A stretch of DNA of 64,000 nt from Macrostomum lignano (taxonomy: Eukaryota), in NCBI GenBank assembly GCA_002269645.1, contig NIVC01001070.1, positions 58,492 to 122,491 of the forward strand, given 5' to 3'. Positions 17,692-63,052 of this stretch are shown piece after piece. Made by a program: the position numbers and the translations under genes. Position 1 is the stretch's first letter; the number at the start of each line of letters is the position of its first letter. The notes under the pieces were generated by a model that saw nothing but the letters and a program-made list of their open reading frames with translations, did not search any database and had not been told where the DNA came from.

Positions 17692-18003
17692 GCATCAAAA
17701 TTGAGCAACTCAACAATGCACTCTGCTGAATGAAATAAAATTGTATCGAGTCGGAGTTTTACTAAATTGTTATTTTTAGTAAAACTAAAATGTTCATGCA
17801 AATATGTCGCTACAAAACAATGCTGTCTGAAATCTCCCTAATAGCAAGAGCTTTAATTTTATGGACAGAAACTGAATACATTTTTGCCAGTTTTAACTCA
17901 ACAAACCTAAGTTAATGGACGCAAACTATTTTGAACAATAAACAAACAAGAAAAGGTCAGCAAGTAATCTACGAATCAACTATTCTATCCGTCCTGTGTT
18001 TTT

Positions 18004-18840
18004 TGTTCTATCAGTATTGTGCTGTCTGTTCTATCAGTATTGTGCTGTCTGTTATATCAGTATTGTGCTGTCTGTTCTATCAGTATTGTGCTGTCTGTTA
18101 TATCAGTATTGTGCTGTCTGTTCTATCAGTATTGTGCTGTCTGTTCTATCAGTATTGTGCTGTCTGTTCTATCAGTATTGTGCTGTCTGTTCTATCAGTA
18201 TTGTGCTGTCTGTTCTATCAGTATTGTGCTGTCTGTTCTATCAGTATTGTGCTGTCTGTTCTATCAGTATTGTGCTGTCTGTTCTATCAGTATTGTGCTG
18301 TCTGTTCTATCAGTATTGTGCTGTCTGTTCTATCAGTATTGTGCTGTCTGTTCTATCAGTATTGTGCTGTCTGTTCTATCAGTATTGTGCTGTCTGTTCT
18401 ATCAGTATTGTGCTGTCTGTTCTATCAGTATTGTGCTGTCTGTTCTATCAGTATTGTGCTGTCTGTTCTATCAGTATTGTGCTGTCTGTTCTATCAGTAT
18501 TGTGCTGTCTGTTCTATCAGTATTGTGCTGTCTGTTCTATCAGTATTGTGCTGTCTGTTCTATCAGTATTGTGCTGTCTGTTCTATCAGTATTGTGCTGT
18601 CTGTTCTATCAGTATTGTGCTGTCTGTTCTATCAGTATTGTGCTGTCTGTTCTATCAGTATTGTGCTGTCTGTTCTATCAGTATTGTGCTGTCTGTTCTA
18701 TCAGTATTGTGCTGTCTGTTCTATCAGTATTGTGCTGTCTGTTCTATCAGTATTGTGCTGTCCGTTCTATCAGTATTGTGCTGTCTGTTCTATCAGTATT
18801 GTGTTCTCTGTTCTATCAGTATTGTGCTGTCTATTCTATT
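18004..18840. repeat. 23-bp minisatellite, about 36 units; target of the Gypsy insertion
   Basis: Tandem TGTTCTATCAGTATTGTGCTGTC. Confidence 0.97.
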
Positions 18841-21398
18841 TGTTGTAACCCGGGTCGGCTTGGGTGCCCAGTCCCGAGTACAATATATATTATATGTGAT
18901 ATAACAGGCGTTGTGACGCTCTGTCTGTACTTTTATGAATACGACGAGCAGGCGTGGCGACGCTCTGCGATAATAATTCGATCCCTCTGGTGTTGTGACA
19001 CTCAGAGTTCACGCTGCGGCTCGAGGTGTGGTGACACTCTCGAGTGCTTCTATTCTCTATACCGTAGGGCGTACGCAATATATATGGTAAACGGTACCGT
19101 ACTACAGAAGCTATATGGTCTCCCGGCGTTATGACGCTCTGGCAAGAATTCGGCCTAGCAAGCTTCCCGAAAAGAAAGGACTCAAACAGCAGGCGGCTTA
19201 CCAGTGGCCAGATGACTGTTCACCGTTTATTATTCGCAGGTCTCAAGCGCAGTTTCCGACTTCTTCTTAATTCTCCAAGACTCTTCTCAATTAGGCTATT
19301 GTGTTTCTTTTATCGAAGTGGCTAATGTTGCTGTTTCTTTTATCCAAGTAGCTAATGTTGCTGTTTCTTTTATCGAAGTAGCTAATGTTGCTGTTTCTTT
19401 TATCGAAGTAGCTAATGTTGCTGTTTCTTTTATCGAAGTAGCTAATGTTGCTGTTTCTTTTATCCAAGTAGCTAATGTTGCTGTTTCTTTTATCGAAGTA
19501 GCTAATGTTGCTGTTTCTTTTATCGAAGTAGCTAATGTTGCTGTTTCTTTTATCGAAGTAGCTAATGTTGCTGTTTCTTTTATCGAAGTGGCTAATGTTG
19601 CTGTTTCTTTTATCGAAGTAGCTAATGTTGCTGTTTCTTTTATCGAAGTAGCTAATGTTGCTGTTTCTTTTATCGAAGTAGCTAATGTTGCTGTTTCTTT
19701 TATCGAAGTAGCTAATGTTGCTGTTTCTTTTATCGAAGTAGCTAATGTTGCTGTTTCTTTTATCGAAGTGGCTAATGTTGCTGTTTCTTTTATCGAAGTA
19801 GCTAATGTTGCTGTTTCTTTTATCCAAGTAGCTAATGTTGCTGTTTCTTTTATCGAAGTAGCTAATGTTGCTGTTTCTTTTATCGAAGTGGCTAATGTTG
19901 CTGTTTCTTTTATCGAAGTAGCTAATGTTGCTGTTTCTTTTATCCAAGTAGCTAATGTTGCTGTTTCTTTTATCGAAGTAGCTAATGTTGCTGTTTCTTT
20001 TATCGAAGTAGCTAATGTTGCTGTTTCTTTTATCGAAGTAGCTAATGTTGCTGTTTCTTTTATCGAAGTGGCTAATGTTGCTGTTTCTTTTATCCAAGTA
20101 GCTAATGTTGCTGTTTCTTTTATCCAAGTAGCTAATGTTGCTGTTTCTTTTATCGAAGTAGCTAATGTTGCTGTTTCTTTTATCGAAGTAGCTAATGTTG
20201 CTGTTTCTTTTATCGAAGTAGCTAATGTTGCTGTTTCTTTTATCCAAGTAGCTAATGTTGCTGTTTCTTTTATCCAAGTAGCTAATGTTGCTGTTTCTTT
20301 TTATCGAAGTGGCTAATGTTGCTGTTTCTTTTATCGAAGTAGCTAATGTTGCTGTTTCTTTTATCGAAGTAGCTAATGTTGCTGTTTCTTTTATCGAAGT
20401 GGCTAATGTTGCTGTTTCTTTTATCGAAGTAGCTAATGTTGCTGTTTCTTTTATCGAAGTAGCTAATGTTGCTGTTTCTTTTATCCAAGTAGCTAATGTT
20501 GCTGTTTCTTTTATCGAAGTAGCTAATGTTGCTGTTTCTTTTATCGAAGTGGCTAATGTTGCTGTTTCTTTTATCGAAGTAGCTAATGTTGCTGTTTCTT
20601 TTATCCAAGTAGCTAATGTTGCTGTTTCTTTTATCGAAGTAGCTAATGTTGCTGTTTCTTTTATCGAAGTAGCTAATGTTGCTGTTTCTTTTATCGAAGT
20701 AGCTAATGTTGCTGTTTCTTTTATCGAAGTGGCTAATGTTGCTGTTTCTTTTATCCAAGTAGCTAATGTTGCTGTTTCTTTTATCGAAGTAGCTAATGTT
20801 GCTGTTTCTTTTATCGAAGTAGCTAATGTTGCTGTTTCTTTTATCGAAGTAGCTAATGTTGCTGTTTCTTTTATCGAAGTAGCTAATGTTGCTGTTTCTT
20901 TTATCCAAGTAGCTAATGTTGCTGTTTCTTTTATCGAAGTAGCTAATGTTGCTGTTTCTTTTATCCAAGTAGCTAATGTTGCTGTTTCTTTTATCGAAGT
21001 AGCTAATGTTGCTGTTTCTTTTATCGAAGTAGCTAATGTTGCTGTTTCTTTTATCAAAACACCAAAACACAAAAAGCACGCAGGAGGTGGGCAAGAGCCA
21101 GAGTCGCACCATAAATAGCACCCAAACCCTGGGGCAGACGGCCCCACCGGCTAAGCTCACCAAAACAAACCACGCCGGCCAGCTAATCAAAACCCCGCCT
21201 AAGGGGGGGAGGGGCAGCACCCGCGCCAAAGCTGGCCCGGCCGCAGCCAACCAGCCCTGAGCACGGGGCAGGGGCACGGCTGGGGAGGGGCACGCGCAAA
21301 GCCCGGCCGGCGGCCAAACCCTGCCACGCCTGCCAACCCCCCCAACCAGCCCCAAAGTGCAACGCGCCCTGCCAACTGACAAGGGCGCATGCACTACA
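18841..21398 (-). repeat. Gypsy 3' LTR (2558 bp) containing an internal 30-bp array
   Basis: Minus strand starts TGTAGTG right after the PPT and ends TTACAACA. 18841-19301 matches 28975-29435, and 21056-21398 matches 40388-40730. Confidence 0.92.
19302..21055. repeat. 30-bp satellite array inside the 3' LTR, about 58 units
   Basis: Unit GATAAAAGAAACAGCAACATTAGCTACTTC (minus strand) with C/G and CTA/CCA variants. Confidence 0.97.
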
Positions 21399-21410
21399 CC
21401 CTCCCCTCCT
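21399..21410 (-). promoter_or_regulatory. Gypsy polypurine tract
   Basis: AGGAGGGGAGGG immediately before the TG of the 3' LTR. Confidence 0.88.
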
Positions 21411-21618
21411 AAAAAAAACAGGGCGGAGCTCGAACCACGGCGACTGGGATTCCAAATTTCAAATAACAAAGCAAAAAAAATCAAAAACAACAAAAAAATT
21501 GGAAACAAACTAATGCAAAAAAAGAAAAATGGTTGCCGCAAAAGAAATATAAAAAAAATACTGGTTTTCTGCACGCAAGTTCGTCAGAGCAACCACGGGG
21601 CACGGAATAGGCTTTACA

Positions 21619-23109
21619 TCAAAGCTGGCGCCACAGAAAACCATCGCAGGTGGCCGGCAGGACGCGCAGGTGGCCGGCAGGAAGCGCAGATGGCCGGCAG
21701 GAAGTGCAGATGGCCGGCAGGGCACGCAGGTGGCCGGGCGGGACGCGCAGGTGGCCGGCAGGACGCGCAAGTGGCCGGCAGGACACGCAGGTGGCCGGCA
21801 CGCGCAGGTGCCGGCAGGACGCGCAAGTGGCCGGCAGGACACGCAGGTGGCCGGCAGGAAGTGCAGATGGCCGGCAGGGCACGCAGGTGGCCGGCAGGAA
21901 GCGCAGATGGCCGGGCGGAAAGCGCAGGTTGCCGACGCAGAAGCCGGCAGGAAGCGCACGTGGCCGCCGCAGAAGCCGGCAGGAAGCGCAGGTGGCCGTC
22001 GCAGAAGCCGGCAGGAAGCGCAGGTGGCCGCCGCAGAAGCCGCTGAGCCATTCCCCCAGGAAGCTTGACCCCACTAGCAAGCAAATAAACCCATACAGTA
22101 CGAGCGTAACAACATACATACAAGTAAGCAGAAAATACAGTATGAATCGGAACTGGGCACCCCAGCGAACCCGAAGTCCAGGGAGACCGACGCAGCTTTT
22201 CAGGACCTCGAGCAGCCTGCCGGGCCGGCGCAAACCGAACAGCGGGATGAGCTCGTGACAGAGCTGTCGGACGAAACAATCAAAACTCTGCCTAGACCAG
22301 TAACGGCGGCCTGCTCTCTGACGCTTTACCGGAGCGATATCTCTGCGGATGAAGAACAACGCCTGCAGCAGGACCATTGACAGTGCGCTCCTCGGTTCTC
22401 GCTGCGAGTCTCGAAACAGCCGTCTCATAGCCGTGAGCACTGACACGATTCCGTCCGACTGTCCAGCCAAAATATGCTTCATCAAACGATGGCGGAGCTG
22501 ACGCGCAGCTGCCGATAACGACAGCTTTTCATCATCCCATATTGCTCCCGACGCGCGATGTGAGACAACCTCCTTGCTTTCCGGTACATCGATCTCCATA
22601 GCTTCTGACTCACTACTTCCGGAGGAGCCATCCGATGCCAGCAACTCGTCTTCTTCTTCTGTGTCGATGCTACACTCATCCGACTCCTCGCTCTCATCGT
22701 CGTCCGAGATTAGAATGTAGCCATCCGCTTCGTAATCGTTCCTCTGTCCCTGTCTCCCCTGCCTGAGACCAGCTTCCTTGCGCTGAGCTTCTTCAACTTC
22801 TCGCCTTTGCTGTACTCCCTCTTCGATGTCCGCCGGCATTCTTACACCAGTAGGAGGTATGAACGTCATTGCGAAGGTTACAGCCTCGTCATACGGGATT
22901 GATTTATCGCCCAACTGGTCGTACATCGCTCGGCGATATGGACACGATAGAATTCTACCAGCAGTCTCAATTTCTTGGAAACGGCGTCCTGCGAGTTCCT
23001 TGTCCGGGTGCTTGTCCGGGTGCCAGAAGAGCGCTAGCTGTCGATAGACTCGCCTGATCTCGGCACGTTCGGCTGTGTGTCCGACTTGGAGGACAGCGTA
23101 CAAATCCAT
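21619..23109 (-). CDS. Retrotransposon-borne J-domain (DnaJ/Hsp40-like) accessory ORF; C-terminal extent uncertain
   Basis: MDLYAVLQV...EIRRVYRQLALFWHPDKHPD...FQEI...ILS.P.RRAMYDQLG is a complete J-domain with HPD. It is intronless and lies between the integrase stop and the PPT. Confidence 0.85.
   Translation of the reverse strand: MDLYAVLQVGHTAERAEIRRVYRQLALFWHPDKHPDKELAGRRFQEIETAGRILSCPYRRAMYDQLGDKSIPYDEAVTFAMTFIPPTGVRMPADIEEGVQQRREVEEAQRKEAGLRQGRQGQRNDYEADGYILISDDDESEESDECSIDTEEEDELLASDGSSGSSESEAMEIDVPESKEVVSHRASGAIWDDEKLSLSAAARQLRHRLMKHILAGQSDGIVSVLTAMRRLFRDSQREPRSALSMVLLQALFFIRRDIAPVKRQRAGRRYWSRQSFDCFVRQLCHELIPLFGLRRPGRLLEVLKSCVGLPGLRVRWGAQFRFILYFLLTCMYVVTLVLYGFICLLVGSSFLGEWLSGFCGGHLRFLPASATATCASCRLLRRPRALPAGFCVGNLRFPPGHLRFLPATCVPCRPSALPAGHLRVLPATCASCRHLRVPATCVSCRPLARPAGHLRVPPGHLRALPAICTSCRPSALPAGHLRVLPATCDGFLWRQL
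21646..22045. repeat. GC-rich tandem repeats (about 20 bp, then about 32 bp units) in the Gypsy 3' region
   Basis: GCAGGTGGCCGGCAGGACGC-type units, followed by CGCAGAAGCCGGCAGGAAGCGCAGGTGGCCGC-type units. Confidence 0.9.
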
Positions 23110-23532
23110 CTGCAAAGCAACGTACTCAAACCTGCGACACACTGTCCCTGACTCCAGATTCTACTCCTGCTCCCCTCTTGCCAGAGCGTCATCTCCTCGG
23201 ACCGTGGCCCGCGGTACCCTGCATCGTAAAGTCCCAGCGCAAATTCGAGTTGTCACCGGATGCCATTCCGAATACCCTCCACCGATGCATAGATTTTGTA
23301 GGCAAAATTTGATTCTCGTCAAAACTTCGATGAAGATGCGATTAAAATGACTTAATGACGCATTAACGAATTTCTTGAATGACGCATTGGCGAACTGCTC
23401 GTACTCACGATGAATGATGCATTGATGAAGTACTCGTATTTATGATGAATGACGCATTCGCGAAATATTTTTCTGGCTTTTAACGATAATCGCATATGAA
23501 ACTGATGAGACTTCACGATGACGAGTAACCCA

Positions 23533-24590
23533 TTAGAATGTCACTGGCTGGCCGTAGCGATCCGGCGGCCGTCGCAACCTTCCGGACCTTCGAGGCTCAG
23601 GTGCAGCTTCCACCGGGTTATGAGTAGGCTGCGGGTCGTCAACCAACTCCATCTGCTCTTCCAGCACCTCGGCGACTTCCTCAGCGTCCTGTGGCGGCAT
23701 CAGTTGAGGCCGAGTCCAAGTCTCGCCTTCCGCATCTGCCTCCGAGTCCGTCTCGTCGACCACTTCCGGCGGTGCCGCGGTCCTAACTGGTGTTTCCAGG
23801 GCGGCCGGTCGAGCGAACTTCCGGAGGTTGTTGAAGTGGACGAACTTCGACTTTTTACGATTTGACGGGTTTTCCACTTTGAAGAGCACCTCGGATCTTC
23901 TTTCGAGCACCTTCACTGGGCCGAGCCAGCTTACGTGAAACTTTGCGGCTTCGTCTGGTTTCAGGGCGGGGCTGTAGACGAAGACATGGTCACCCTCCTG
24001 AATATCGGATCCTCGGGTTCTTTTATCGTACTGGTCCTTCTGTCGCCGCTGATAAGTGTTCAACTGCTGTCGAGCAGCGCGATGAGCTGTCTGCAATTTG
24101 TCTTCTAGCTCCTTGACGAAATTTACATGCGAATCGACAGGCTGTGGCGGCTGGTCAGTCAAGTCTATCGGTAGGCGCATCTCCGTGCCATAGACCATGT
24201 AGTGGGGAGTATAACCCGTTGCTCGATGCACGCTTGATCGGTACGCCATTAACGCAGAGCTGACGAATTCTTCCCAGTCGTTTCGTCCTGAGTCCTCTAG
24301 GCAGCACTTGAGGATGGATTTTAAACTTTTATTGAAGTTTTCTACTTGTCCATTTCCGCTCGGATGATAAGCTGTTGTTCTGGACTTGCGGATCTCGAGT
24401 ATCCTGCACATTTCGCGCATCACTTGCGATTCGAAGTTTCTTCCTTGGTCGCTGTGCAAAGTACTCGGACACCCATGCTGGCTAATCCATCGATTGAAAA
24501 GCGCCCTTGCCACCGTCCTTGCCTTCTGGTTGCGAAGCGGGTACGCGTCAGGCCACTTCGTAAACGAATCTTGGACTGTCAGGAGATAAT
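23533..24590 (-). CDS. Gypsy integrase core and C-terminus, separated from pol by a 1-nt frameshift near 24588
   Basis: Restoring one base gives GN.YLLTVQDSFTKWPDAYPL. Catalytic D, D and E are in DIVGP, SDQG and VENFN. Confidence 0.9.
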
Positions 24591-27500
24591 GTTTCCAGCC
24601 TTACTCCGCGGTAGCGGCCCGACAATGTCCATCATGACGCAATCGAATGGTGCTGCGAATGTCAACGGTTGCAGGGGTGCTCGGTTTCGCTTGCCCGGCT
24701 TTGACTTGCAGCAGGTGGCACAACCGCGAATATATTCTTCAATGGCACGAGACAATCCTGGACGCCAGTAGCGCTGAAGCACTTTAAATTTTGTCTTCGC
24801 AAAGCCCATGTGGCCACCTCCCACTCCCTCGTGTAGGGTTTTCAAGATACGATCCAATGCCTTTCGTGGCAGCACCATTTGATACTCATCGCGCCTGTCT
24901 TTGTGTCTCACAAGGAGCACGTTCTCTTGCAGCACCAGGTCGTCTTTTCGAGTCCAGACGGCTCTAGCCAGTGGACTCCAAGCTGTCTCGCTTTTATCTG
25001 GAACTGGGTTTGAGCCAAGCGCTTCCTTTACTGTTCTCAAATCGTCGTCTTGATCCTGCTCGCTTGCCAGATTGCCGGCTGAGAATCGTTCAAATTCGAC
25101 TGCATTTAGTCCTTCTGGATGCTGCGCACATGCCGGGCATGTCTCCGCTCCGAAATGTCTCCGTACTGGCTTCCTCGACATTGCGTCCGCGTTGCCATGC
25201 GATCGACCTGGTCTGTGAACGATGCGGTACTGAAATGGAGCCAACTTCTCCAACCAGCGAGCAACCTGTCCCTCGGCGTCACTGAAGTTTTTTAACCATT
25301 GCAGGCTGCTGTGGTCCGTTCGCAGACAGAACGCTTTTCCAAGCAGATAATATCTGAACTTCATGATGAAAGTCACAACCGCTAGTAGTTCTAAACGAGT
25401 CGTAGAATAGTTGCGTTCGGCTTGATTTAGTGTCTTGGACCCATAGGCGATCACTCGTTCTGCTCCATCTGGCTGGACTTGAGAAAGTACCGCTCCTATG
25501 CCCATCTTCGAACTGCCATCAGTATCGAGGATAAACTCTCCGGCATCCGGGGAGAAATCCGGATGAGCCATAACCTCTGAACTTGTCATTCGTTCCTTCA
25601 ATGTTTTGAACGCCAGCTGCTGTTCCGTTTTCCATTCAAACTTTGCGTCTTTTGTTGTCAATCGAGTTAGAGGCGCTGCTATTGCGGCGAAATCTTTAAT
25701 AAACTTTCTGTAATAGCCACACAGGCCCAAGAATGAATGCAGCTCCGTCGAGGATCGCGGTGTTGGCCAGTTCTTCACTTCTTGAACTTTCTCCTCATCG
25801 GTACTGATGCCAGCAGCCGACAGCGTGTGACCGAGAAATTTCACTTGCTTTTGCAAAAAGTGACACTTCTGGGGCTTCAGGCACAAATTTGCTTGCCGCA
25901 ACTTGCTGAATATTTCCTCCAGTCTTCTCAGGTGTTCATCCACGTCGGTTGACCAAACCAGTAGATCGTCGATGTAGACGAGACAGGTTTTCCACATCTG
26001 CTTGTCCAGAACGGCTGCCATCAACCTGGTGAATGTTGCTGGGCTGTTCACTAAGCCGAACGGCATAACCTTCCATCGAAATTGTCCGCGATGCGGCACT
26101 GCAAACGCCGTCTTGTCCTGATCCTGAGGTCTCACCCCTACTTGCCAAAACCCGCTGTGAAGGTCCATTGTCGAGAAGATCTTGGCTCCGTGTACTGCCT
26201 CCAGCGCATCATCGACCCTCGGCATCGGCACTGCATCCTTGACGGTGACCTCATTCAACTTCCGATAATCGACGCACATCCTCATTTCCCCTGATTTCTT
26301 CTTTACGCACACCAAAGGAAAGCACCATGGTGACTGTGCTTCTTCGATCTGCCCCTTTTCCAGCAACTCGTTGACTTGACGATCTACTTCTGGCTGTAAG
26401 TGGGGAGGCAGACGACGCGGTGGGATCTTGATTGGGCGCGCATTCTCGGTGTTAATTTCATGCTCCACCACGGTAGTTAACTTGCTTGAAGTCTGCTTGG
26501 TCGTGAACACATCGCTGTAACTCCGGACAAGGATTCTAAATTCTTCGTCTTCTTTCGTCGACAGTCCACAGTCGCCGTACGAGTTTGGTAGCAAGTCTGC
26601 TTCCGAAGGGCTGTTGCTGCCTTGGACCTTCGGCTCTTCCTGTGAATCGTCTCCTGACTCTACGGCTAAGAGCTTGATGGTGTTCAACGGTTCGGTGGAT
26701 TCTAGGGGGCAGAACCACCCGAGCGTACAACCTTGGCGAATTCTGACTGGCTCTTCCGTGATATTGATGAGTCGAGTCGGCAGACGGCTGCCGCTATTTG
26801 GGATCACTAAGGCCTTAGCAAGCCAGCGGCCAGCTGCCAAATCGTTCGCTCCGAGATTCTCAGTTAGACCGACACACCCTCTGTTCCGTCGTCCTTTGCT
26901 CTCCAGCCTTGCTGACAGAACTGCTTGATGACCTGGCGGTATTGTGCTGGACCTTGTCGCCAAAATTCTGCAAACGATCGGGCGCTCAGCTTGCCATCGG
27001 AACGGGATTGCAGTGTCCTGCACTGAAAAGACAGCTGTCTTGTAGTCGATGACGCAACTGTTGTCCCTGCAGAAGTCGGATCCCAATACCAGTTGGTACT
27101 TCACTCCGCTGACTACCAAGGCTGGAGTATCTATTACTTTATCAGCGATTGACAGTCGCAACAGGACTGTTCTCTCGATTTCGATCGGGCTGCCGTTTGC
27201 TAAGCTAACATAGCCTTCAGCACCGGCCAAATCTCTGACGCTCTGTTTCGGCATACTTTGGTAGGCTTCCCGTGAGATAATGGTGCAGGAAGCTCCCGAG
27301 TCCACTAGCGCGTTCACCCTCCGCCCTGCGATTGAGGCCGTAACATATATCGACGCAGGATTGATTTGAATTGACTGAGGTGCGTTGACGGTGATTGGGC
27401 GCTGCGACTGTGCAAAACCGGCTAGTTGATGGTGAGGTGCAGTACCGGACGCTGGAGGCTGATGAGGCACTGTAACGGACACTGGATGCTGATGAGACTC

Positions 27501-27848
27501 AGTACCGGACACTGTATGCTGATGAGGCGCAGTACCGGACACTGGAGGCTGATGAGGCACTGTACCGGACACTGGATGCTGATGAGACGCTGTACCGGAC
27601 ACTGGATGCTGATGAGGCGCAGTACCGGACACTGGATGCTGATGAGGCGCAGTACCGGACACTGGAGGCTGATGAGATGAAGTACCGGACACTGGATGCT
27701 GATGAGGCGCAGTACCGGACACTGGAGGCTGATGAGACGCAGTACCGGGCGTTTGATGATGATGAGATGAGATGACGACTTGTTCGGAGGCTGACGAATT
27801 GCAGGGGCTCACTTGCCTCCAGCTGGTGGGCCCCTCTTGCCTTTTCCC
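24579..27848 (-). CDS. Gypsy pol: protease, reverse transcriptase, RNase H, integrase zinc finger
   Basis: ALVDSGAS, CVDYRKLN, MPFGL, YIDD, FILDTDGS, ELLAVV, TDHSSL, GGHMG...CATC. Confidence 0.95.
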   Translation of the reverse strand, partial: GKRQEGPTSWRQVSPCNSSASEQVVISSHHHQTPGTASHQPPVSGTAPHQHPVSGTSSHQPPVSGTAPHQHPVSGTAPHQHPVSGTASHQHPVSGTVPHQPPVSGTAPHQHTVSGTESHQHPVSVTVPHQPPASGTAPHHQLAGFAQSQRPITVNAPQSIQINPASIYVTASIAGRRVNALVDSGASCTIISREAYQSMPKQSVRDLAGAEGYVSLANGSPIEIERTVLLRLSIADKVIDTPALVVSGVKYQLVLGSDFCRDNSCVIDYKTAVFSVQDTAIPFRWQAERPIVCRILATRSSTIPPGHQAVLSARLESKGRRNRGCVGLTENLGANDLAAGRWLAKALVIPNSGSRLPTRLINITEEPVRIRQGCTLGWFCPLESTEPLNTIKLLAVESGDDSQEEPKVQGSNSPSEADLLPNSYGDCGLSTKEDEEFRILVRSYSDVFTTKQTSSKLTTVVEHEINTENARPIKIPPRRLPPHLQPEVDRQVNELLEKGQIEEAQSPWCFPLVCVKKKSGEMRMCVDYRKLNEVTVKDAVPMPRVDDALEAVHGAKIFSTMDLHSGFWQVGVRPQDQDKTAFAVPHRGQFRWKVMPFGLVNSPATFTRLMAAVLDKQMWKTCLVYIDDLLVWSTDVDEHLRRLEEIFSKLRQANLCLKPQKCHFLQKQVKFLGHTLSAAGISTDEEKVQEVKNWPTPRSSTELHSFLGLCGYYRKFIKDFAAIAAPLTRLTTKDAKFEWKTEQQLAFKTLKERMTSSEVMAHPDFSPDAGEFILDTDGSSKMGIGAVLSQVQPDGAERVIAYGSKTLNQAERNYSTTRLELLAVVTFIMKFRYYLLGKAFCLRTDHSSLQWLKNFSDAEGQVARWLEKLAPFQYRIVHRPGRSHGNADAMSRKPVRRHFGAETCPACAQHPEGLNAVEFERFSAGNLASEQDQDDDLRTVKEALGSNPVPDKSETAWSPLARAVWTRKDDLVLQENVLLVRHKDRRDEYQMVLPRKALDRILKTLHEGVGGGHMGFAKTKFKVLQRYWRPGLSRAIEEYIRGCATCCKSKPGKRNRAPLQPLTFAAPFDCVMMDIVGPLPRSKAGNIIS
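27440..27750 (-). repeat. In-frame 30-bp coding repeat, about 10 units, upstream of the protease
   Basis: Encodes (HQHPVSGTAP)n-like decamers in the pol frame. Confidence 0.9.
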
Positions 27849-28729
27849 GGCTTTGGGCACTGGAATGAGAGATGGCCTATCTCCCCGCAGTTGTAGCACT
27901 TGACACCGCTACGCTGCTTCGAGCTGGACGGAGCCGCCTGCTTGGATTGTTGCTTGTCTTGAAGGCCGGGTTCGGGCGGCTCCTGCTGGCCCTGCTGCAT
28001 CTGCTCCATCCGTCGGATCTTTTCTTCCATTTCCTTTACTTTTTGACGCAGTTGCCGTAGCTCCTCGTCTTTGCCGGTGTCACCTGTCGACGTTTCGGTG
28101 GCAAAGGCATTCAGCCCAGCCCTGGGTCTGGCTTTGGACTGGGTCGAAGACGCCTTCTGGGCTGCTTCAAGTTGTCTTACTGTTCGAATGGCATCGGTGA
28201 GGTTGGCCGGCTGCTGCAGGTACAGTCTTTCTCGGACAGTGTCGGTTACTCGAACGCCTTTTAGAAATCTGTCTTTCGCCAGCTCTGTCCTGGTGTCGGC
28301 ATCCGCGGTGGGGAAGGCATTGCGCACCAACTCCAGCAGCTCGTCCCCGTAGGTCTCCACAGACTCCTTGTCTAGCTGATCTCGATTCGATAATTCAAAA
28401 CGGTAGTCCTGGGCTGTTCTGTTCATGGTGAACCGCGCCAGCAGTGCATCCGTGAATTCCCCGTACTCGATGTCGTCTGCCAAGTCCAGCTTATCAACGG
28501 CAGCGTAGGCTGTTGTGAGGTCGAGTAGGCCGATCAGGTGCGGCCGCCTGGCTTCTTCTTCTATACCGACAGCCTCGCAGTACTCGTTGAAACTCTGCAG
28601 CCATAGGCTGAAATTCATCGTTGGTATGTACTTGGGCGGCTTCGAGAGTCGTGGCGCTGCTCGGTCGGCGTTGGCTCTGAGGCGCGCAGCCAGCGCATCG
28701 ATCAGTTGGTCCATAGCTTGATCACCCAT
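27809..28729 (-). CDS. Gypsy gag
   Basis: Capsid-like PPKY...FSLWLQSF and C-terminal CCHC knuckle CYNCGEIGHLSFQC. Confidence 0.92.
   Translation of the reverse strand: MGDQAMDQLIDALAARLRANADRAAPRLSKPPKYIPTMNFSLWLQSFNEYCEAVGIEEEARRPHLIGLLDLTTAYAAVDKLDLADDIEYGEFTDALLARFTMNRTAQDYRFELSNRDQLDKESVETYGDELLELVRNAFPTADADTRTELAKDRFLKGVRVTDTVRERLYLQQPANLTDAIRTVRQLEAAQKASSTQSKARPRAGLNAFATETSTGDTGKDEELRQLRQKVKEMEEKIRRMEQMQQGQQEPPEPGLQDKQQSKQAAPSSSKQRSGVKCYNCGEIGHLSFQCPKPGKGKRGPPAGGK
27842..27848 (-). promoter_or_regulatory. Candidate -1 ribosomal frameshift site for gag-pol
   Basis: G GGA AAA heptamer in the gag frame, and pol is in the -1 frame. An AGGGGC...GCCCCT stem starts 6 nt downstream. Confidence 0.7.
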
Positions 28730-28953
28730 GGCCGAAGTCACTGAATACCGTTGCTACTCTTTACTCTGAGGTGGTGATAGCTATCAATCTCTGATAACCA
28801 ATCAGTTGCCTGTCACCGTGATCAATGTCTTTTGCGGTAGGGCAATAGCCGCAGGCGATAAGCAAAAGTCGTTTTAATAAGAAAAAACGCTCACAATATG
28901 ACAGCAATTTTCATAGAAAGCAACTGCGCCGACTTTCAATCTTTGGGGACAGG

Positions 28954-28971
28954 GTCCCTGTTCGGGCGCCA
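28954..28971 (-). promoter_or_regulatory. Gypsy primer-binding site (tRNA-Lys)
   Basis: TGGCGCCCGAACAGGGAC, 3 nt from the LTR end; the classic tRNA-Lys PBS. Confidence 0.92.
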
Positions 28972-28974
28972 ATT

Positions 28975-29700: not shown

Positions 29701-29993
29701 TGTTTGGGAGGTAGATTGAAGCATTGATTTTCTTTCCAATTCCACTGCGTGATTTAATGTACGTACGTGTTTATTATTCAATTTTCTATGTACGCTGATT
29801 TAGCCCAGGCCCATCTCACCCACCCCCCTCCACGCTGGCTGATTCTGACTGACTGCAATATATATATCATCGAGAGGGCTTATTAGCCCTGTGTACGGTT
29901 TTACGCTTTTCGTTTTGTTAGCGTCTCGCTTGAGCCTCAGCTCCAAAATAGTTATTGGCGGACCATCGGTCTTTTCATTTCTATAGTACATTT

Positions 29994-30011
29994 TGGTAGC
30001 AGAGCGTGGTT
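29994..30011 (+). promoter_or_regulatory. BEL primer-binding site, initiator tRNA-Met-like
   Basis: TGGTAGCAGAGCGTGGTT, 3 nt after the LTR. TGGTAGCAGAG is complementary to the animal tRNA-iMet 3' end. Confidence 0.75.
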
Positions 30012-30076
30012 GGACAAGCCTAAATTACCACTGACGTGGCAAGCAATAGAATCCTACTGTGAAACGAAGGACCAAG

Positions 30077-33000
30077 ATGGACAGTGACGACGCCAATGAA
30101 CAACAACAGGAAGCCCAAGACGATGCCGGCGCGCTGCGTTTAGAGAAGCTGCGCTTCGAGAAATCCCGAAAAAAAGCAGCGTTCACTCGTTGCAAAAACA
30201 AGTTGTCTTGGCTGCTAAAGACGCGCGCCTCTGATGACGAAGTGCAAGCTACCTGCGATGCTCTATCCGACCTGCAAGACCTGGTCAGCGCCATCCAGGA
30301 AGAACTGCATCAAGGCTACGCCGACGCCAAGGACAACGAGAGGCGACAACGCCTACTAGAAGAGATGGAGGAGACTGAGCGCGACTACCAAGCTGCCATT
30401 CAGCGCGTCGAAAGTTCTAGAAACCGGGGATTGCAGCGCGCCCAAGAAGCCCCTCCTGCCGCGAGTTCAAGCGGTGAGAACGCTGCGGGTGACCAAGAAG
30501 AAGCAGCTGGTGAGTTAGACAAACTTTCTGGCAGTGCTGCGTCCAGCAAAGGATCCAACCCGAAGGAGCTTTCAAAGGATTTGTGGAAGATACTGAAGCG
30601 TGTTGAAATCCCAACGTTTAGTGGAGAAAAGCAGAAGTATGAAAACTGGAAGGCAGCCTTTGTTGCGTGCATCGACAGCGCCCCTGCAACACCAGAATTC
30701 AAGTTGCTGCAGCTTAGGCAGTACCTCGGCGGTGAAGCTTTGAAGGTTATAGAACATCTAGGACACTCCGCTGCTGCATATGAGGCTGCAAAAGAGAGAC
30801 TAGAGAGAGAATTTGGTGGACAGCGTAGGCAACTTGCTCTGCACTTGGAAGAGCTGGACAGCTTCCCGATCGTGCGAAATGGAAACGCCAAGGATCTGAA
30901 AAGCTTTGCTAATCTACTGGATGTGGCTGTCGTCAACCTTGAGGAGGCGGGAAAAGAGGCAGAGCTTCAAGATGGGATGTTGTATGTGAGGCTGCAGAAA
31001 AAGTTGCCTGAGCAGATGGTTGCCAGCTACCGGAGGTGGATCTTTGAGCAGCGGAAGCCGGAGAGTGTTAGAAATCTGAGAATTTGGGTGCTGCAAGAAG
31101 CAGAGTTTCAGACTGAAGCGTCAGAGATTGTGCAGGGCGTTGCCACCATGCAGCAGGAGCGTCAAAAGCGAGAGCAGCGACCAAAGACTTTCGTTACTAC
31201 GGACAGTGACAAGAAGGTACAGCGAAAGATTTGCATTGTTTGTCAAGGTGATCACGAGCTGTGGTCCTGCAGTGAGTTCAAGGAGCTTCCGGTGGAAAAA
31301 CGCTGGGACGCGGCGCAGAGCTCGAAGTGTTGTTTCCGGTGCTTGGGCCAAGGACATCTTGGTAGCCAATGTCGGCGTGGTCGTCGGTGCGGCATCAGCA
31401 GCTGCACAAAGTTCCATCATCGCCTGCTTCATGCAGAAAAAGTGTTGGCCAAGTCTGGTGAAGCGAAGCAGACTGCATCCAAGGACGCTAAATCCGCTTC
31501 CAGTTCAGGAAAGACTGGACCGGTGACGCTTCTGTCGGCTGGTGAAACGGCAATCTCGCTACGAACGGTACCTGTAGTCCTACGGAACGGGTCCCGGAAG
31601 CTGAAGGTGAATGCCTTGCTCGACGATGCCAGTACCAGGAGCTACGTCAACATCGGGATAGCAGAAGCGCTTGGAGTGCATGGAGCGCTCGAAAAGGTGA
31701 AAGTCGGAGTCATCAATGGCCAAACAGAGACCTTCATGACAGCCCCAGTCTGCTTTAGCTTGGAAAGTCTGGATGGTCAGACCAGCTCAATGATCGTCGC
31801 CTTCACCGCTGATCACGTGACCGGGTCCCTCAAAGGCGTCGACTGGCACGAAGAAGCGCAGCAGTGGCCTCATCTGAGAAATGTACCGTTTCCGAAGCTG
31901 TGTGAGCCTGCAGTAGTGGACTTGCTGATTGGTGCTGATCACCCGGATCTTCACGTGTCCCTCAAGGAAATCGTCGGACAGCCGCTGGAGCCAAAGGCGC
32001 GCCTGACTCCCCTGGGTTGGACGTGCATCGGTCGCACAGAGCAGGACAATTCTGAGATGCAGAACGCCCATTTTGCTGCCACTTTCTTCAGCTGCGATTC
32101 CGAATCTGGTCAGGTGGCTAAGATCCTGCGGCAGTTTTGGGAGATCGAGAACGTCTCAGAAGGTGCCAATCGAAGTCCGCTGACCGCCGATGAGGAGAGA
32201 GCCGTCCAGCAAGCCAAGTCGTCGCTAAAGTACACGAAGGGCCGTTACCAGATCGGGATTCCATGGAAAAAGGATCGGCTGGCTCCAGCAGGCACTTTCT
32301 CAATGGCCTTGAAGCGACTAAAGAACACCGAACAGCGGCTGATTAAGGATATGAACGTCTGCAAGCAGTATCAGGAGATCCTTGAAAAGTATGAACAGCA
32401 AGGGTATATCCGAAAAGTGTCGCAAGCTGAGACTGAAGGCCGCTGTTTCCTGCCGCACTTCCCAGTGCTGCGGCCAGACAAGGCTACAACAAAATTGCGG
32501 ATAGTCTTTGATGCATCGGCTGCCAGATTGAACGACCAGATCCTCCAGGGCCCCAAACTGCAGAGGGATTTGGTTGACGTGCTGCTTCGGTTCCGCCGAC
32601 ACCCGATTGCGATCGCATGCGACGTAGCGGAAATGTATCTCCAGATCGAGATGGACCCGAAGGATAGGCCGCTGCACAGTTTCCTTTGGCGGGACGCCGA
32701 TCCTTCAAAGCAACCGGATGTCTACGAGTTCAACAGAGTGGTGTTCGGCGTCACCAGCTCTCCTTTCTTGGCACAGTTCGTTACCCGCTGCCATGCTGAA
32801 AAGTTAAAAGGTGAGCTTCCAGAGGCGGCCGAGACAGTACTGCACTCTACCTATATGGATGATAGCCTGGACTCTGCGCCCACCGAGGCAGCCGCCTGCA
32901 GGCTGTACGATCAACTCAGTGAGCTCTGGAGGCGCGCCGGCATGCACGCGCGCAAGTGGGTCTCGAACTCGAGAGCTGTGCTCGATAGAATCCCACCTGA

Positions 33001-33742
33001 AGACCGTGCAGCCGAAGTTACCTTGGACAGCAAAGAACTACCATGCACCAAGACACTGGGTGTCACGTGGCAGAGTGAGCAGGACGAATTTACCTTTAAA
33101 GATGAAAACGTCTTGGATACCCAGAAGCTTCAACAGCGAACGGCTTCTCAGCAGTTGCGATGGCATTTCAACCCGCCCGCTGCGCCGCACTTCGGTGGGG
33201 TGCACGAAATCATGATCAAAGCAGCGAAGAAGGCAATCTGGGCAATTCTGAAGGAGGCGGACGTCACGGATGAGGAGCTGCTAAGCGCGTTTGCTGGAGC
33301 GGAGGCACTTCTGAATTCAAGGCCGTTGACGTACCAGACGGCGCATCCGAGTGATGATGTGCCGCTGACGCCGAATCACTTCCTCATCGGGCAAGTCGGC
33401 GGGAAGTTTGCACCGGAGGTCGACGCTGCCATCGCCCGCAGTCCTTCAAGAAGATGGCGTCACGTTCAGCAGCTGGTGTCGCAGATCTGGCGCCGGTGGT
33501 TGCGCGAGTGGCTGCCGGGACTCGCACCGCGGAGCAAGTGGCGCCGCGAGCTGCCTGACCTACAACCTGGAGACGTGGCGCTGCTGGTGAGCCCCGACTC
33601 GCCTCGGGGTCACTGGCCGCTGGCTCGCGTGCTGGAGGTCATGCGCGGTCCTGACGGTCACGTGAGAGTCGCCCCAATCAGAGTCGGTGATCGCACAATG
33701 ACGAGACCAATAACAAAGTTGTGTCCAATATCTGCAGGTTAG
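30077..33742 (+). CDS. BEL gag-pol polyprotein lacking RNase H and the integrase N-terminus
   Basis: Three Cys/His knuckles (CIVCQGDH, CFRCLGQGH, C..C.KFHHRLLH), LLDDAS, RIVFDAS, YMDD, WHFNPPAAPHFGG, PLTPNHFL. Confidence 0.92.
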   Translation: MDSDDANEQQQEAQDDAGALRLEKLRFEKSRKKAAFTRCKNKLSWLLKTRASDDEVQATCDALSDLQDLVSAIQEELHQGYADAKDNERRQRLLEEMEETERDYQAAIQRVESSRNRGLQRAQEAPPAASSSGENAAGDQEEAAGELDKLSGSAASSKGSNPKELSKDLWKILKRVEIPTFSGEKQKYENWKAAFVACIDSAPATPEFKLLQLRQYLGGEALKVIEHLGHSAAAYEAAKERLEREFGGQRRQLALHLEELDSFPIVRNGNAKDLKSFANLLDVAVVNLEEAGKEAELQDGMLYVRLQKKLPEQMVASYRRWIFEQRKPESVRNLRIWVLQEAEFQTEASEIVQGVATMQQERQKREQRPKTFVTTDSDKKVQRKICIVCQGDHELWSCSEFKELPVEKRWDAAQSSKCCFRCLGQGHLGSQCRRGRRCGISSCTKFHHRLLHAEKVLAKSGEAKQTASKDAKSASSSGKTGPVTLLSAGETAISLRTVPVVLRNGSRKLKVNALLDDASTRSYVNIGIAEALGVHGALEKVKVGVINGQTETFMTAPVCFSLESLDGQTSSMIVAFTADHVTGSLKGVDWHEEAQQWPHLRNVPFPKLCEPAVVDLLIGADHPDLHVSLKEIVGQPLEPKARLTPLGWTCIGRTEQDNSEMQNAHFAATFFSCDSESGQVAKILRQFWEIENVSEGANRSPLTADEERAVQQAKSSLKYTKGRYQIGIPWKKDRLAPAGTFSMALKRLKNTEQRLIKDMNVCKQYQEILEKYEQQGYIRKVSQAETEGRCFLPHFPVLRPDKATTKLRIVFDASAARLNDQILQGPKLQRDLVDVLLRFRRHPIAIACDVAEMYLQIEMDPKDRPLHSFLWRDADPSKQPDVYEFNRVVFGVTSSPFLAQFVTRCHAEKLKGELPEAAETVLHSTYMDDSLDSAPTEAAACRLYDQLSELWRRAGMHARKWVSNSRAVLDRIPPEDRAAEVTLDSKELPCTKTLGVTWQSEQDEFTFKDENVLDTQKLQQRTASQQLRWHFNPPAAPHFGGVHEIMIKAAKKAIWAILKEADVTDEELLSAFAGAEALLNSRPLTYQTAHPSDDVPLTPNHFLIGQVGGKFAPEVDAAIARSPSRRWRHVQQLVSQIWRRWLREWLPGLAPRSKWRRELPDLQPGDVALLVSPDSPRGHWPLARVLEVMRGPDGHVRVAPIRVGDRTMTRPITKLCPISAG

Positions 33743-34757
33743 TTTGCGAACCTTTGCTAGAGAATTAGACTTTGTCAGGTTTTGCAATTTTTCTGATGAG
33801 TTGTTCAATTTTCCTGTTTGTTGCATTGTTCGTAAAGTCTTCTTTCCCTTTCATGCTAATAGGAATCACCCTGTTTTTGCCGTCTTAACCCAATTTTCGT
33901 TTTCAGTGTTCAACGCGATTAACATTCATTATTTAGCTATTTATTTTCTTGCGTGAATTTTGCTGAACAGCAGTCGTTACGGTTTAGTGAATTTGTCGGC
34001 AAGTTTGTCTTTTGCGTTTTTTGAGTTTTTTACGAGCGATGTTTGCATTATTTGAGCTCTACTTAATATTGCTTGATTTTCTGCGCTTAGAAGTACCATA
34101 GTTTATGCGCCAGTTCCGACCTTTTGATAGCCCAATGCTTACAATTGTTGTTTCAGTTTTTGTTTCAGTTGCGTTTGGTGGCGGAAGTCTGCGTTCGTGT
34201 TCAATTTTGAAATTTTATATGATAGCTGACGTACTTCTGCAAAATTTTCGATTGTCATCTACGATCTGCGTACTTATCTTCACCTTTTGCTCTATTTTTC
34301 TACCATTCACAATGTCGCCATCAATGTTTCATGCAACGTTGTTTTTTTGCTTTTTGAGTTCGATTTTGTATCACGCATCGTTTTCGAATATTTTCCTAAT
34401 ACCGTATTCGTTTTCATTGTTTCATCCCTCGAATAGTTTTTGTCATTGTCATGCCAAGGTGGGGGTATGTTTGGGAGGTAGATTGAAGCATTGATTTTCT
34501 TTCCAATTCCACTGCGTGATTTAATGTACGTACGTGTTTATTATTCAATTTTCTATGTACGCTGATTTAGCCCAGGCCCATCTCACCCACCCCCCTCCAC
34601 GCTGGCTGATTCTGACTGACTGCAATATATATATCATCGAGAGGGCTTATTAGCCCTGTGTACGGTTTTACGCTTTTCGTTTTGTTAGCGTCTCGCTTGA
34701 GCCTCAGCTCCAAAATAGTTATTGGCGGACCATCGGTCTCTTCATTTCTATAGTACA

Positions 34758-40207: not shown

Positions 40208-40387
40208 AGACAGCACAATACTGATAGAACAGACAGCACAATACTGATAGAACAGACAGCACAATACTGATAGAACAGACAGCACAATACTGATAGAACA
40301 GACAGCACAATACTGATAGAACGGACAGCACAATACTGATAGAACAGACAGCACAATACTGATAGAACAGACAGCACAATACTAATA
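40208..40387. repeat. 23-bp minisatellite in reverse orientation, about 8 units; outer flank of the Gypsy 5' LTR
   Basis: GACAGCACAATACTGATAGAACA is the reverse complement of the 18004-18840 unit. It ends in AATA before the LTR TG. Confidence 0.95.
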
Positions 40388-62306: not shown

Positions 62307-62570
62307 ATTAGCTACTTCGATAAAAGAAACAGCAACATTAGCTACTTCGATAAAAGAAACAGCAACATTAGCCACTTCGATAAAAGAAACAGCAACATTA
62401 GCTACTTCGATAAAAGAAACAGCAACATTAGCCACTTCGATAAAAGAAACAGCAACATTAGCTACTTCGATAAAAGAAACAGCAACATTAGCCACTTCGA
62501 TAAAAGAAACAGCAACATTAGCTACTTGGATAAAAGAAACAGCAACATTAGCCACTTCGATAAAGAAACA
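62307..62570. repeat. 30-bp satellite, 9 units, mirror of 29436-29700
   Basis: Same order of variant units as the left arm. Confidence 0.96.
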
Positions 62571-63031: not shown

Positions 63032-63034
63032 AAT

Positions 63035-63052
63035 TGGCGCCCGAACAGGGAC
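63035..63052 (+). promoter_or_regulatory. Gypsy primer-binding site (tRNA-Lys), copy 2
   Basis: TGGCGCCCGAACAGGGAC. Confidence 0.92.

What the first reader, a model, noticed from the sequence alone, without database searches (positions are those of the whole stretch)
19302..21055. A 30-bp satellite built into the LTR, probably inside the R region
Seen: both LTRs have the order GC-rich segment, 30-bp array, unique segment. TATA-like, CCAAT and GC-box motifs lie 5' of the array (40586-40676) and the AATAAA lies 3' of it (62641; mirror 19226-19231). Established: R lies between the transcription start and the poly(A) site and mediates the first strand transfer. Inference: R is itself a tandem array, so out-of-register strand transfer could change copy number at each retrotransposition, and the element would seed this satellite wherever it inserts.
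Basis: partly seen in the sequence, partly recalled or inferred. Interest (0 to 1): 0.85.

Follow-up and report, generated by a model that had tools for sequence, protein, structure and literature searches.

The report
LTR minisatellite blown up at one locus
A 30-bp motif that normally occurs one to three times inside the long terminal repeat of a flatworm (Macrostomum lignano) Ty3/Gypsy retrotransposon has grown to 58-390 copies at this one insertion, a good but ordinary example of satellite DNA arising from a mobile element.

Summary
19302-21055 is 58.4 units of a 30-bp repeat, and it lies inside a true LTR (18841-21398, minus strand) of a Ty3/Gypsy element of Macrostomum lignano. The LTR is bounded by TGT..ACA ends, a polypurine tract, a primer-binding site and a 4-bp target duplication. 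The unit sits between a conserved CCAAT/TATA-like block and the LTR's only AATAAA, so an R location is plausible. No transcript ends could be examined, so it stays unproven.

Eight other insertions of the family carry 1.4, 2.4 or 3.4 units, never an array. Paired LTRs always agree, and sub-lineages keep their state. Here the two LTRs disagree strongly: 58 units against at least 190 (arm 1) or 390 (arm 2). The growth therefore happened in the chromosome after integration, by unequal exchange or slippage, not by strand transfer. The same locus carries a nested BEL/Pao element, a tandem duplication of BEL plus array, and an inverted duplication that may be an assembly misjoin. Two other tandem arrays inside the element, outside any R, vary as much between copies.

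Known parallels are the IAP R-region repeats and the Ogre-derived plant satellites. This is a new member of a known kind.

The parts
17983..18839 (.). 23-bp tandem array (37 units), the DNA into which the Gypsy element inserted (3' flank of the element). The target-site duplication AATA, read on the minus strand, is 18837-18840.
   Evidence: the array phase continues at 40208-40387
18841..21398 (-). 3' LTR of the Ty3/Gypsy element. It consists of C' (21398-21059, GC-rich, with a TATA-like box), the 30-bp array, and B' (19301-18841, with AATAAA at 19231-19226).
   Evidence: Polypurine tract plus TGTAGTG start...TTACAACA end and target duplication; homology to LTRs of L001-L013
19302..21055 (-). 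The finding: 58.4 units of GATAAAAGAAACAGCAACATTAGCTACTTC (sense strand). Variant order: AABABAAAABCAAABACABAACAA.BAAABBCAAABACABACAAAAACAAABAAABC.
21399..28974 (-). Internal region of the Gypsy element. The polypurine tract is 21399-21410. The primer-binding site TGGCGCCCGAACAGGGAC is 28971-28954.
21619..23142 (-). ORF3: a J-domain (DnaJ) protein with an acidic region and a hydrophobic stretch. Its C-terminus is encoded by GC-rich 20/32-bp arrays (21645-22042).
   Evidence: Pfam DnaJ 1.2e-17; present in all copies and in L009
23533..27899 (-). pol (protease, reverse transcriptase, RNase H, integrase). It is broken once (one frameshift) relative to the 1361-aa product P0040 of another copy. 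It contains a coding 30-bp array at 27433-27766 (11.1 units).
27809..28741 (-). gag, with a CCHC zinc knuckle.
   Evidence: relatives at 46-63% identity
28975..40207 (-). 5' LTR, arm 1, lacking its C' start. It consists of B' (28975-29435), 8.8 units (29436-29700), a BEL/Pao insertion, then about 182 units (34758-40207). It ends abruptly against the inverted 23-bp array.
29701..34757 (+). BEL/Pao-like element: 5,057 bp, 290-bp LTRs with TGT..ACA ends, 5-bp target duplication CTAAT, and an intact 1227-aa ORF. It is inserted in the 30-bp array.
40208..40387 (+). 23-bp array (7.8 units) in the opposite orientation. It is the 5' flank of the Gypsy insertion. The target duplication AATA is 40384-40387. 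40207/40208 is the inversion junction.
40388..63031 (+). Complete 5' LTR, arm 2. It consists of C' (40388-40754, with ATTGG at 40599 and TATTTAT at 40670), 326.8 units (40755-50539), BEL/Pao, 55.2 units (55598-57252), BEL/Pao, 8.8 units (62307-62570), and B' (62571-63031, with AATAAA at 62641).
50540..55597 (-). Second copy of the same BEL/Pao insertion (same CTAAT flanks). The ORF is intact.
57253..62306 (-). Third copy of the same BEL/Pao insertion. The ORF is broken (at least two frame changes).
63032..64000 (+). Start of the internal region of arm 2 (primer-binding site, leader, start of gag). It runs off the window. It is 99.6% identical to the reverse complement of 28002-28974.

Best explanation
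The array is the middle of the 3' LTR of a young Ty3/Gypsy retrotransposon of Macrostomum lignano.

The family's LTR is about 870-930 bp. It natively carries a short seed of 1.4-3.4 units of a 30-bp motif. The seed lies between a GC-rich promoter block (CCAAT-like and TATA-like boxes) and a segment that holds the only AATAAA.

One copy inserted into a 23-bp minisatellite, leaving the target duplication AATA. After integration the seed in each LTR expanded independently in the chromosome, to 58 units in the 3' LTR and several hundred in the 5' LTR. The likely process is unequal exchange or replication slippage between units, the usual way minisatellites grow in this minisatellite-rich genome.

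A BEL/Pao element then landed in the 5' array. Exchange between the arrays on either side of it duplicated the BEL-plus-array block. The whole region was then duplicated in inverted orientation, or assembled that way.

Shown:
- the LTR boundaries;
- the seed state in other copies;
- concordance of paired LTRs elsewhere and discordance here;
- the nested insertion and the duplications.

Inferred:
- the molecular mechanism of growth;
- the R location of the units;
- that such long arrays would disable the copy, because the AATAAA of the 5' LTR ends up kilobases from the start site.
For: - Organism and family: pol is 99% identical to M. lignano PAA55822.1, in a cluster of 17 members.
- LTR ends: polypurine tract, primer-binding site and TGT..ACA termini in the window and in L001-L013. 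4-bp target duplications in 6 of 7 complete elements: GAAG, CTTA, TTTT, CCCT, CCAC and TAAT.
- Unit counts at 8 independent sites: 1.4 five times, 2.4 twice, 3.4 once. All 7 complete elements have the same number and the same variants in both LTRs.
- Window LTRs: 58 units against 8.8+182 (arm 1) or 326.8+55.2+8.8 (arm 2). The variant strings share only the last two units next to B'.
- The large arrays are nearly pure consensus in the middle and rich in variants at the edges.
- All three BEL copies have the same CTAAT flanks, so they stem from one insertion. The tails of the arrays next to them resemble each other.
- Paired-LTR substitution divergence is 0.62% here against 0-0.36% elsewhere, so this insertion has had the longest time in the chromosome.
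- Other arrays in the element also vary between copies, and even between two assemblies of one locus (34.1 against 33.1 units).
- The flanking DNA of the other loci is full of 19-51-bp arrays. Tandem and simple repeats make up 15% of the genome (PMC5730564).
Against: - Only 8 other sites were read, all from one older assembly (Mlig_3_7) and all reached through annotated pol proteins. Copies with long arrays could be collapsed or missing there.
- The number of units at the moment of integration is unknown. Part of the array could have been present in the template.
- A noisy patch in the arm 1 array, and small frame breaks in otherwise 99.9% identical copies, suggest imperfect assembly. Exact unit counts may be off.
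- No data distinguish unequal crossing-over from slippage or break-induced replication.
Confidence: 0.72

Rival explanations
1. The units lie in R, so the RNA carries them at both ends. Out-of-register minus-strand transfer changes the number at each replication cycle, and this is how the array is built and spread.
For: - The layout CCAAT / TATA-like / units / AATAAA is conserved in 13 of 13 LTRs scanned and is mirrored in the related family L010.
- Unit number differs between elements (1.4, 2.4, 3.4) while paired LTRs agree. The changes therefore occurred before or during DNA synthesis.
- Abnormal strand transfer has been proposed for tandem repeats in plant Ogre elements (PMC7004042).
- IAP elements have variable tandem repeats in R (PMC2861705).
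Against: - No family member other than this locus has more than 3.4 units.
- Independent insertions of one sub-lineage keep the same state (L003 and L005; L001/L007 and L006). Change is therefore rare, not per cycle.
- The two LTRs of this insertion are grossly unequal, which reverse transcription cannot produce.
- Arrays outside the LTR vary more.
- The inferred R has about 55 nt of unique sequence 5' of the units and about 95 nt 3' of them. These would hold a full-length transfer in register.
- The candidate R RNA shows no special structure (z = +1.26).
- The R boundaries were not measured.
Confidence: 0.12
2. Much of the odd architecture is an assembly artefact. The two inverted arms would be two versions (haplotigs or homeologues) of one locus, joined head to head inside an unresolved array. 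The unit counts would then be unreliable.
For: - The arms are 99.5-99.9% identical. They share the same BEL insertion and together supply the two halves of a single target duplication.
- The junction at 40207/40208 is not the symmetry axis of the arms.
- A roughly 40-bp noisy patch sits in the arm 1 array 57 units from BEL, exactly where arm 2 has a second BEL.
- M. lignano assemblies are known to be redundant (PMC5730564; PMC12801592).
- Isolated frame breaks occur in one BEL copy and in pol.
Against: - The arms differ in structure: one BEL against two, and 182 units against 326.8+55.2. They are therefore not one sequence written twice.
- Real inverted duplications are common in repeat-rich regions.
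- Even under this model each arm still has a kilobase-scale array inside an LTR, and the 58-unit 3' LTR array is unaffected.
Confidence: 0.3
3. The 30-bp array is an older satellite of the host, and the retrotransposon merely inserted into it or captured it.
For: The element does sit in satellite DNA, and arrays lie on both sides of the unique LTR parts.
Against: - The flanking satellite is a different, 23-bp unit, and it carries the target duplication.
- The 30-bp unit is inside the LTR at the same position in all 17 other LTRs, at unrelated loci.
- The unit occurs nowhere else in about 260 kb of fetched M. lignano DNA.
- It is absent from the metagenome collection and from the related families L008-L010.
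Confidence: 0.03

Closest known systems
Satellites derived from tandem sub-repeats of plant Ogre/Tat Ty3/Gypsy elements (Lathyrus sativus FabTR families; PMC7004042, citing Macas et al. 2009)
   Same: Short arrays of a unit are carried inside many copies of a Ty3/Gypsy family, and the same unit is found expanded to long arrays. Both stages are seen in one genome. Abnormal strand transfer is discussed as the origin of the short arrays.
   Different: There the repeats lie in the 3' untranslated internal region, not in the LTR. The hosts are plants. Many expanded arrays exist there, free of the element. Here a single locus is expanded, and it is still bracketed by the LTR parts.
Variable tandem repeats in the R region of mouse IAP LTRs (13-bp core TCTCTCTTGCTTC as printed in PMC2861705)
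   Same: A tandem motif sits between the promoter and the poly(A) site of an LTR, and its number differs between copies (IAP LTRs range from 322 to 456 bp). This is the nearest precedent for the idea that R is itself a tandem array.
   Different: In IAP the R region is defined by transcripts. Here it is only inferred from motifs. IAP variation is tens of bases, not kilobases, and no satellite-scale array is reported there.
Tandem repeats derived from centromeric retrotransposons in maize (PMC3648361; known to me from title and abstract only)
   Same: Parts of Ty3/Gypsy elements are turned into tandem arrays.
   Different: Those repeat units are long pieces of the element, generated differently. 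They are not a pre-existing 30-bp sub-repeat of the LTR.
Repeated enhancer units in the U3 of retroviral LTRs (my own knowledge, not checked here)
   Same: LTR-internal direct repeats whose number varies between isolates.
   Different: Those lie upstream of the TATA box. Here the units are downstream of the TATA-like box.

Membership tests
Ty3/Gypsy (Ty3/Mdg4) LTR retrotransposon | Two direct LTRs with TG..CA termini, flanked by a short target-site duplication | tested here: met
   TGTAGTG...TTACAACA termini. 4-bp duplication in the window (AATA) and in 6 of 7 complete relatives.
Ty3/Gypsy (Ty3/Mdg4) LTR retrotransposon | Primer-binding site next to the 5' LTR and polypurine tract next to the 3' LTR | tested here: met
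   TGGCGCCCGAACAGGGAC lies 3 nt after the LTR, and AGGAGGGGAGGG abuts the 3' LTR. That this site is of the tRNA-Lys type is my own knowledge. No tRNA gene was available to compare.
Ty3/Gypsy (Ty3/Mdg4) LTR retrotransposon | gag with zinc knuckle; pol in the order protease, reverse transcriptase, RNase H, integrase | tested here: met
   Pfam zf-CCHC, Asp_protease_2, RVT_1, RT_RNaseH, Integrase_H2C2 and rve, in that order. The clade within the superfamily was not determined.
Retrotransposon-derived satellite DNA (Ogre type) | The same unit is present as a short array inside ordinary copies of the element | tested here: met
   1.4-3.4 units in 17 LTRs at 8 sites.
Retrotransposon-derived satellite DNA (Ogre type) | Long arrays of the unit that exist at many loci or are free of element flanks (a true satellite) | not testable with these tools
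   Only this locus is seen expanded, and every block is bounded by LTR parts, a nested BEL or the inversion junction. No eukaryotic genome-wide search was available. The metagenome scan returned 0 hits.
LTR with tandem repeats in R (IAP type) | Units lie between the mapped transcription start and the mapped poly(A) site | not testable with these tools
   Motif positions only. The TATA-like box is about 85 bp 5' of the units and the single AATAAA about 70 bp 3' of them, in 13 of 13 LTRs. No transcript data were available.
LTR with tandem repeats in R (IAP type) | Unit number varies among family members | tested here: met
   1.4, 2.4 and 3.4 units, with variant differences.
BEL/Pao LTR retrotransposon (the nested element) | LTRs, target duplication, and BEL/Pao-type protein domains | tested here: inconclusive
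   290-bp LTRs with TGT..ACA ends and a 5-bp duplication CTAAT. Pfam DUF1759, RVT_1 and DUF5641 were found. No protease or integrase-core hit was found, and the element is only 5.06 kb, so it may be an internally shortened member.

The most novel reading that the evidence does not exclude
The 30-bp units really lie in R, and their number (1.4, 2.4, 3.4) is occasionally reset during reverse transcription by premature, out-of-register minus-strand transfer. On this reading the family would be a natural record of transfer register. The window would show, in an animal, the full path from an R-region sub-repeat to a kilobase-scale satellite still embedded in its LTR.
Probability: 0.25. Interest if true: 0.55.

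Novelty: new member of a known kind. Interest (0 to 1): 0.35.

Why it matters
The locus shows both ends of a known process in one family. Ordinary young copies carry a 1-3-unit seed in the LTR. One older copy has that seed grown to hundreds of units, with a nested insertion and block duplications that record unequal exchange.

This is a clean animal example of satellite birth from a retrotransposon. Most documented cases are from plants. M. lignano has public 5'-end and 3'-end RNA libraries, so the question of whether the units are in R could be answered from existing data.

It does not reveal a new mechanism. The idea that the element spreads a satellite wherever it lands is not borne out.

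Tried and rejected
- Transcripts that would mark R: the M. lignano gag is not in the protein collection (best hit 63% identity). No RNA-derived contig could therefore be fetched. The look-ups returned only genomic contigs.
- The unit in public metagenome contigs: 0 hits.
- More relatives via a gag alignment in metagenome contigs: 221 pattern matches, none confirmed.
- The unit in the literature, both strands: 0 papers. A search for M. lignano satellite papers found nothing relevant.
- Rfam and tRNA scans of the window and loci: nothing.
- Special RNA structure in the candidate R: none (z = +1.26).
- Alternative rejected, LTR = B' only with the array in the internal 3' region: the polypurine tract and the TGT start lie at C', and the target duplications bracket C'...B' in six elements.
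- Alternative rejected, a start site in B' (TATA-like runs near the LTR end): the only AATAAA would then lie upstream of the start, leaving no terminal redundancy. This is inference.
- Heat-shock elements of the kind reported for other M. lignano families (PMC12801592): by eye I saw none in this LTR. No regular-expression scan was run.
- ORF3 in the word-indexed protein search: no hits. The full HMMER search found about five full-length relatives.
Full report
**1. What is at the coordinates**

Tandem Repeats Finder gives 19302-21055 as 58.4 copies of a 30-bp unit, 97% matches, score 3345. The same unit forms five further blocks:
- 29436-29700: 8.8 units
- 34758-40207: about 182 units
- 40755-50539: 326.8 units, opposite strand
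- 55598-57252: 55.2 units, opposite strand
- 62307-62570: 8.8 units, opposite strand

I masked the arrays and compared the window with itself. This shows the unique pieces around them:
- B: 18840-19301 = 28974-29435 = reverse complement of 62571-63032, 100% identical.
- C: 21059-21398 = reverse complement of 40388-40728, 97.9% identical.
- A 5,058-bp unit with 290-bp terminal direct repeats, present three times: 29701-34757, 50540-55597 and 57253-62306.

**2. Which elements these are**

Pfam on the long ORFs shows a Ty3/Gypsy element on the minus strand between 21399 and 28974:
- gag with a zinc knuckle;
- protease, reverse transcriptase, RNase H and integrase;
- a third ORF with a J domain.

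The 5-kb unit is a BEL/Pao-like element (DUF1759, RVT_1, DUF5641).

The Gypsy pol is 99% identical to a Macrostomum lignano protein, PAA55822.1, from a cluster of 17 members. The window is therefore M. lignano DNA.

**3. The LTR boundaries**

On the element's sense strand, the polypurine tract AGGAGGGGAGGG is followed directly by TGTAGTGCATGC at 21398. The LTR ends ...GGGTTACAACA. In the 5' LTR this is followed by AAT and the primer-binding site TGGCGCCCGAACAGGGAC.

I fetched twelve further M. lignano loci from assembly GCA_002269645.1 through members of the pol cluster. They represent eight independent insertion sites, because L001/L007 and L004/L011 are duplicate versions of the same sites. 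All show the same termini, polypurine tract and primer-binding site. Six of the seven complete elements have a 4-bp target duplication.

In the window:
- the 3' LTR is 18841-21398 (minus strand);
- the complete 5' LTR is 40388-63031 (plus strand);
- the flanks on both sides are one 23-bp minisatellite in continuous phase, with AATA duplicated at 40384-40387 and 18837-18840.

The array is therefore inside a true LTR.

**4. The state of the family**

In all 17 LTRs of the other loci the same unit sits at the same place, between C' and B'. It is present only as 43, 73 or 103 bp, which is 1.4, 2.4 or 3.4 units:
- 1.4 units at five sites
- 2.4 units at two sites
- 3.4 units at one site

In all seven complete elements the two LTRs have the same number and the same variants.

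Unit state follows LTR sub-lineages:
- L003 and L005 share one variant.
- L004/L011 and L012 share another, with a diagnostic change in the partial unit.
- L001/L007 and L006 both have 2.4 units.

The number therefore changed a few times in the history of the family, before integration of the copies seen, and is otherwise inherited stably.

The unit occurs nowhere else in the fetched loci. It is absent from the related families L008-L010 and from the metagenome collection.

**5. This locus is the exception**

The two LTRs of this one insertion carry 58 units (3') against 326.8+55.2+8.8 units (5', arm 2) or at least 8.8+182 units (5', arm 1). The variant strings share only the last two units next to B'. 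The large arrays are almost pure consensus inside and variant-rich at the edges.

Both LTRs of an element are copied from one template, and they are identical in every other copy. The inequality must therefore have arisen in chromosomal DNA.

Other observations at this locus fit growth after integration:
- The 3' LTR has lost 23 bp just upstream of the array and carries a changed CCAAT-like box.
- Paired-LTR divergence is 0.62% here against 0-0.36% elsewhere.
- A BEL/Pao element inserted into the array, with target duplication CTAAT. That same insertion is now present three times with identical flanks.
- The array tails next to the three BEL copies resemble each other. This is what unequal exchange between the arrays on either side of BEL would produce.

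**6. A control inside the element**

The element has two other tandem arrays that are not in the LTR.
- A coding 30-bp array near the start of pol has 11.1 units in the window and 18-47 in the other copies. It differs by one unit (34.1 against 33.1) between the two versions of one locus.
- The GC-rich 20/32-bp arrays at the end of ORF3 also vary.

The host DNA around the other copies is full of 19-51-bp arrays. Tandem and simple repeats are reported as 15% of this genome (PMC5730564).

Array instability here is a general property of the genome. It does not require a position in R.

**7. Is the unit in R?**

Every one of the 13 LTRs scanned has this layout:
- an ATTGG box near position 210;
- CTATTTATGG near position 280;
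- the units from about position 366;
- a single sense-strand AATAAA about 70 bp after the units, followed by a T/GT-rich stretch.

A related family (L010, gag 59% identical) has GATTGGCTG, a TACTTAAGG box, about 115 bp containing a CT-rich low-complexity stretch, and then AATAAA. L009 has the boxes but no canonical AATAAA.

TATA-like runs also exist in B'. A start there would leave the only AATAAA upstream of it, with no terminal redundancy. R spanning the units is therefore the most economical reading. I put it near 55%. It rests on motifs only. The candidate R RNA is not unusually structured.

If the inferred start and poly(A) site are right, R has unique sequence on both sides of the units. 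Only premature transfers could then slip register. That fits the rare one-unit steps and not the kilobase arrays.

**8. The architecture of the window and a caution**

Arm 1 (28002-40207, minus sense) and arm 2 (40208-64000, plus sense) are 99.5-99.9% identical. Together they supply the two halves of one target duplication. They are therefore copies of one insertion.

Several features make me cautious:
- The junction at 40207/40208 joins the 30-bp array directly to the inverted 23-bp array. It is not the symmetry axis of the arms.
- A noisy patch lies in the arm 1 array 57 units from BEL, where arm 2 has its second BEL.
- One BEL copy and the Gypsy pol carry small frame breaks. There is one frameshift in pol and at least two frame changes in the third BEL. 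The other two BEL ORFs are intact.

A real inverted duplication and a head-to-head misjoin of two versions of one locus are both possible. Neither changes the main conclusion.

**9. Comparison with what is known**

- Variable tandem repeats inside the R region are documented for mouse IAP LTRs (PMC2861705).
- Short tandem sub-repeats inside Ty3/Gypsy Ogre elements that expand into satellites are documented in Lathyrus, with abnormal strand transfer discussed as their origin (PMC7004042).
- The recent survey of M. lignano LTR retrotransposons mentions neither tandem repeats nor a J-domain ORF in its main text (PMC12801592).

The finding is therefore a new member of a known kind.

**10. Verdict**

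- LTR-resident unit: yes.
- R location: plausible but untested.
- Strand-transfer-driven growth and seeding of a satellite at every insertion: not supported.

Interest is 0.35.

Noticed in passing
window 21619-23142 (-); L009 5865-6659: The Gypsy element carries a third ORF after pol that begins with a J domain (DnaJ, 1.2e-17), followed by an acidic stretch and a hydrophobic segment. It is present in all M. lignano copies and in a divergent relative (gag 51-54% identical). Similarity reaches well past the J domain (30% identity over 261 aa). A full HMMER search found only about five full-length relatives among 1.8 billion representatives. I know of no described J-domain gene in an LTR retrotransposon. 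A literature search found none.
   Followed up: partly
window 18841-19160 (rc) = 62712-63031; L010 600-800; L009 465-730: The U5-like part of the LTR holds five spaced copies of a small palindrome, GAG-YGTC-N3/4-ACRC-C (GCGT..ACGC). Two copies read GTGT..ACAC, changed on both sides. The same motif recurs 3-4 times at the same place in two related families whose LTRs are otherwise unalignable. It could be a set of small RNA hairpins or a protein-binding site.
   Followed up: partly
window 27433-27766; e.g. L006 6036-7444: A 30-bp (10-codon) array inside the pol ORF varies from 11 to 47 units between copies of the family. It differs by one unit between two assemblies of the same locus (L004 against L011).
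   Followed up: yes
window 29701-34757, 50540-55597, 57253-62306: A 5.06-kb BEL/Pao-like element (290-bp LTRs, target duplication CTAAT, one 1227-aa ORF without detectable protease or integrase core) inserted in the 30-bp array. It was then copied with it. Two copies are in tandem in arm 2, separated by 55 units.
   Followed up: yes
window 40207/40208 and 36473-36510: There is an abrupt junction of the 30-bp array to the inverted 23-bp array. There is also a roughly 40-bp degenerate patch in the arm 1 array, exactly where arm 2 has its second BEL copy. This may be a misjoin or collapse in the assembly.
   Followed up: partly
window 21056-21080 and about 21183 (3' LTR) against 40729-40754 and 40599 (5' LTR): The 3' LTR lacks 23 bp just upstream of the array and has the CCAAT-like box changed (GATTGG to GATTAG). 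C' differs by about 2% between the two LTRs, while B' is 100% identical.
   Followed up: partly
window 17983-18839 and 40208-40387: The element inserted into a 23-bp minisatellite (37 and 7.8 units on the two sides). Other arrays lie nearby: a 48-bp unit at 866-1603 and a 37-bp unit at 4777-5251.
   Followed up: no
window 3471-4682 (-), 8915-10060 (-): Probable host ORFs to the left of the element, one with a Mab-21 C-terminal domain hit and one with a SAP domain. I did not examine them further.
   Followed up: no
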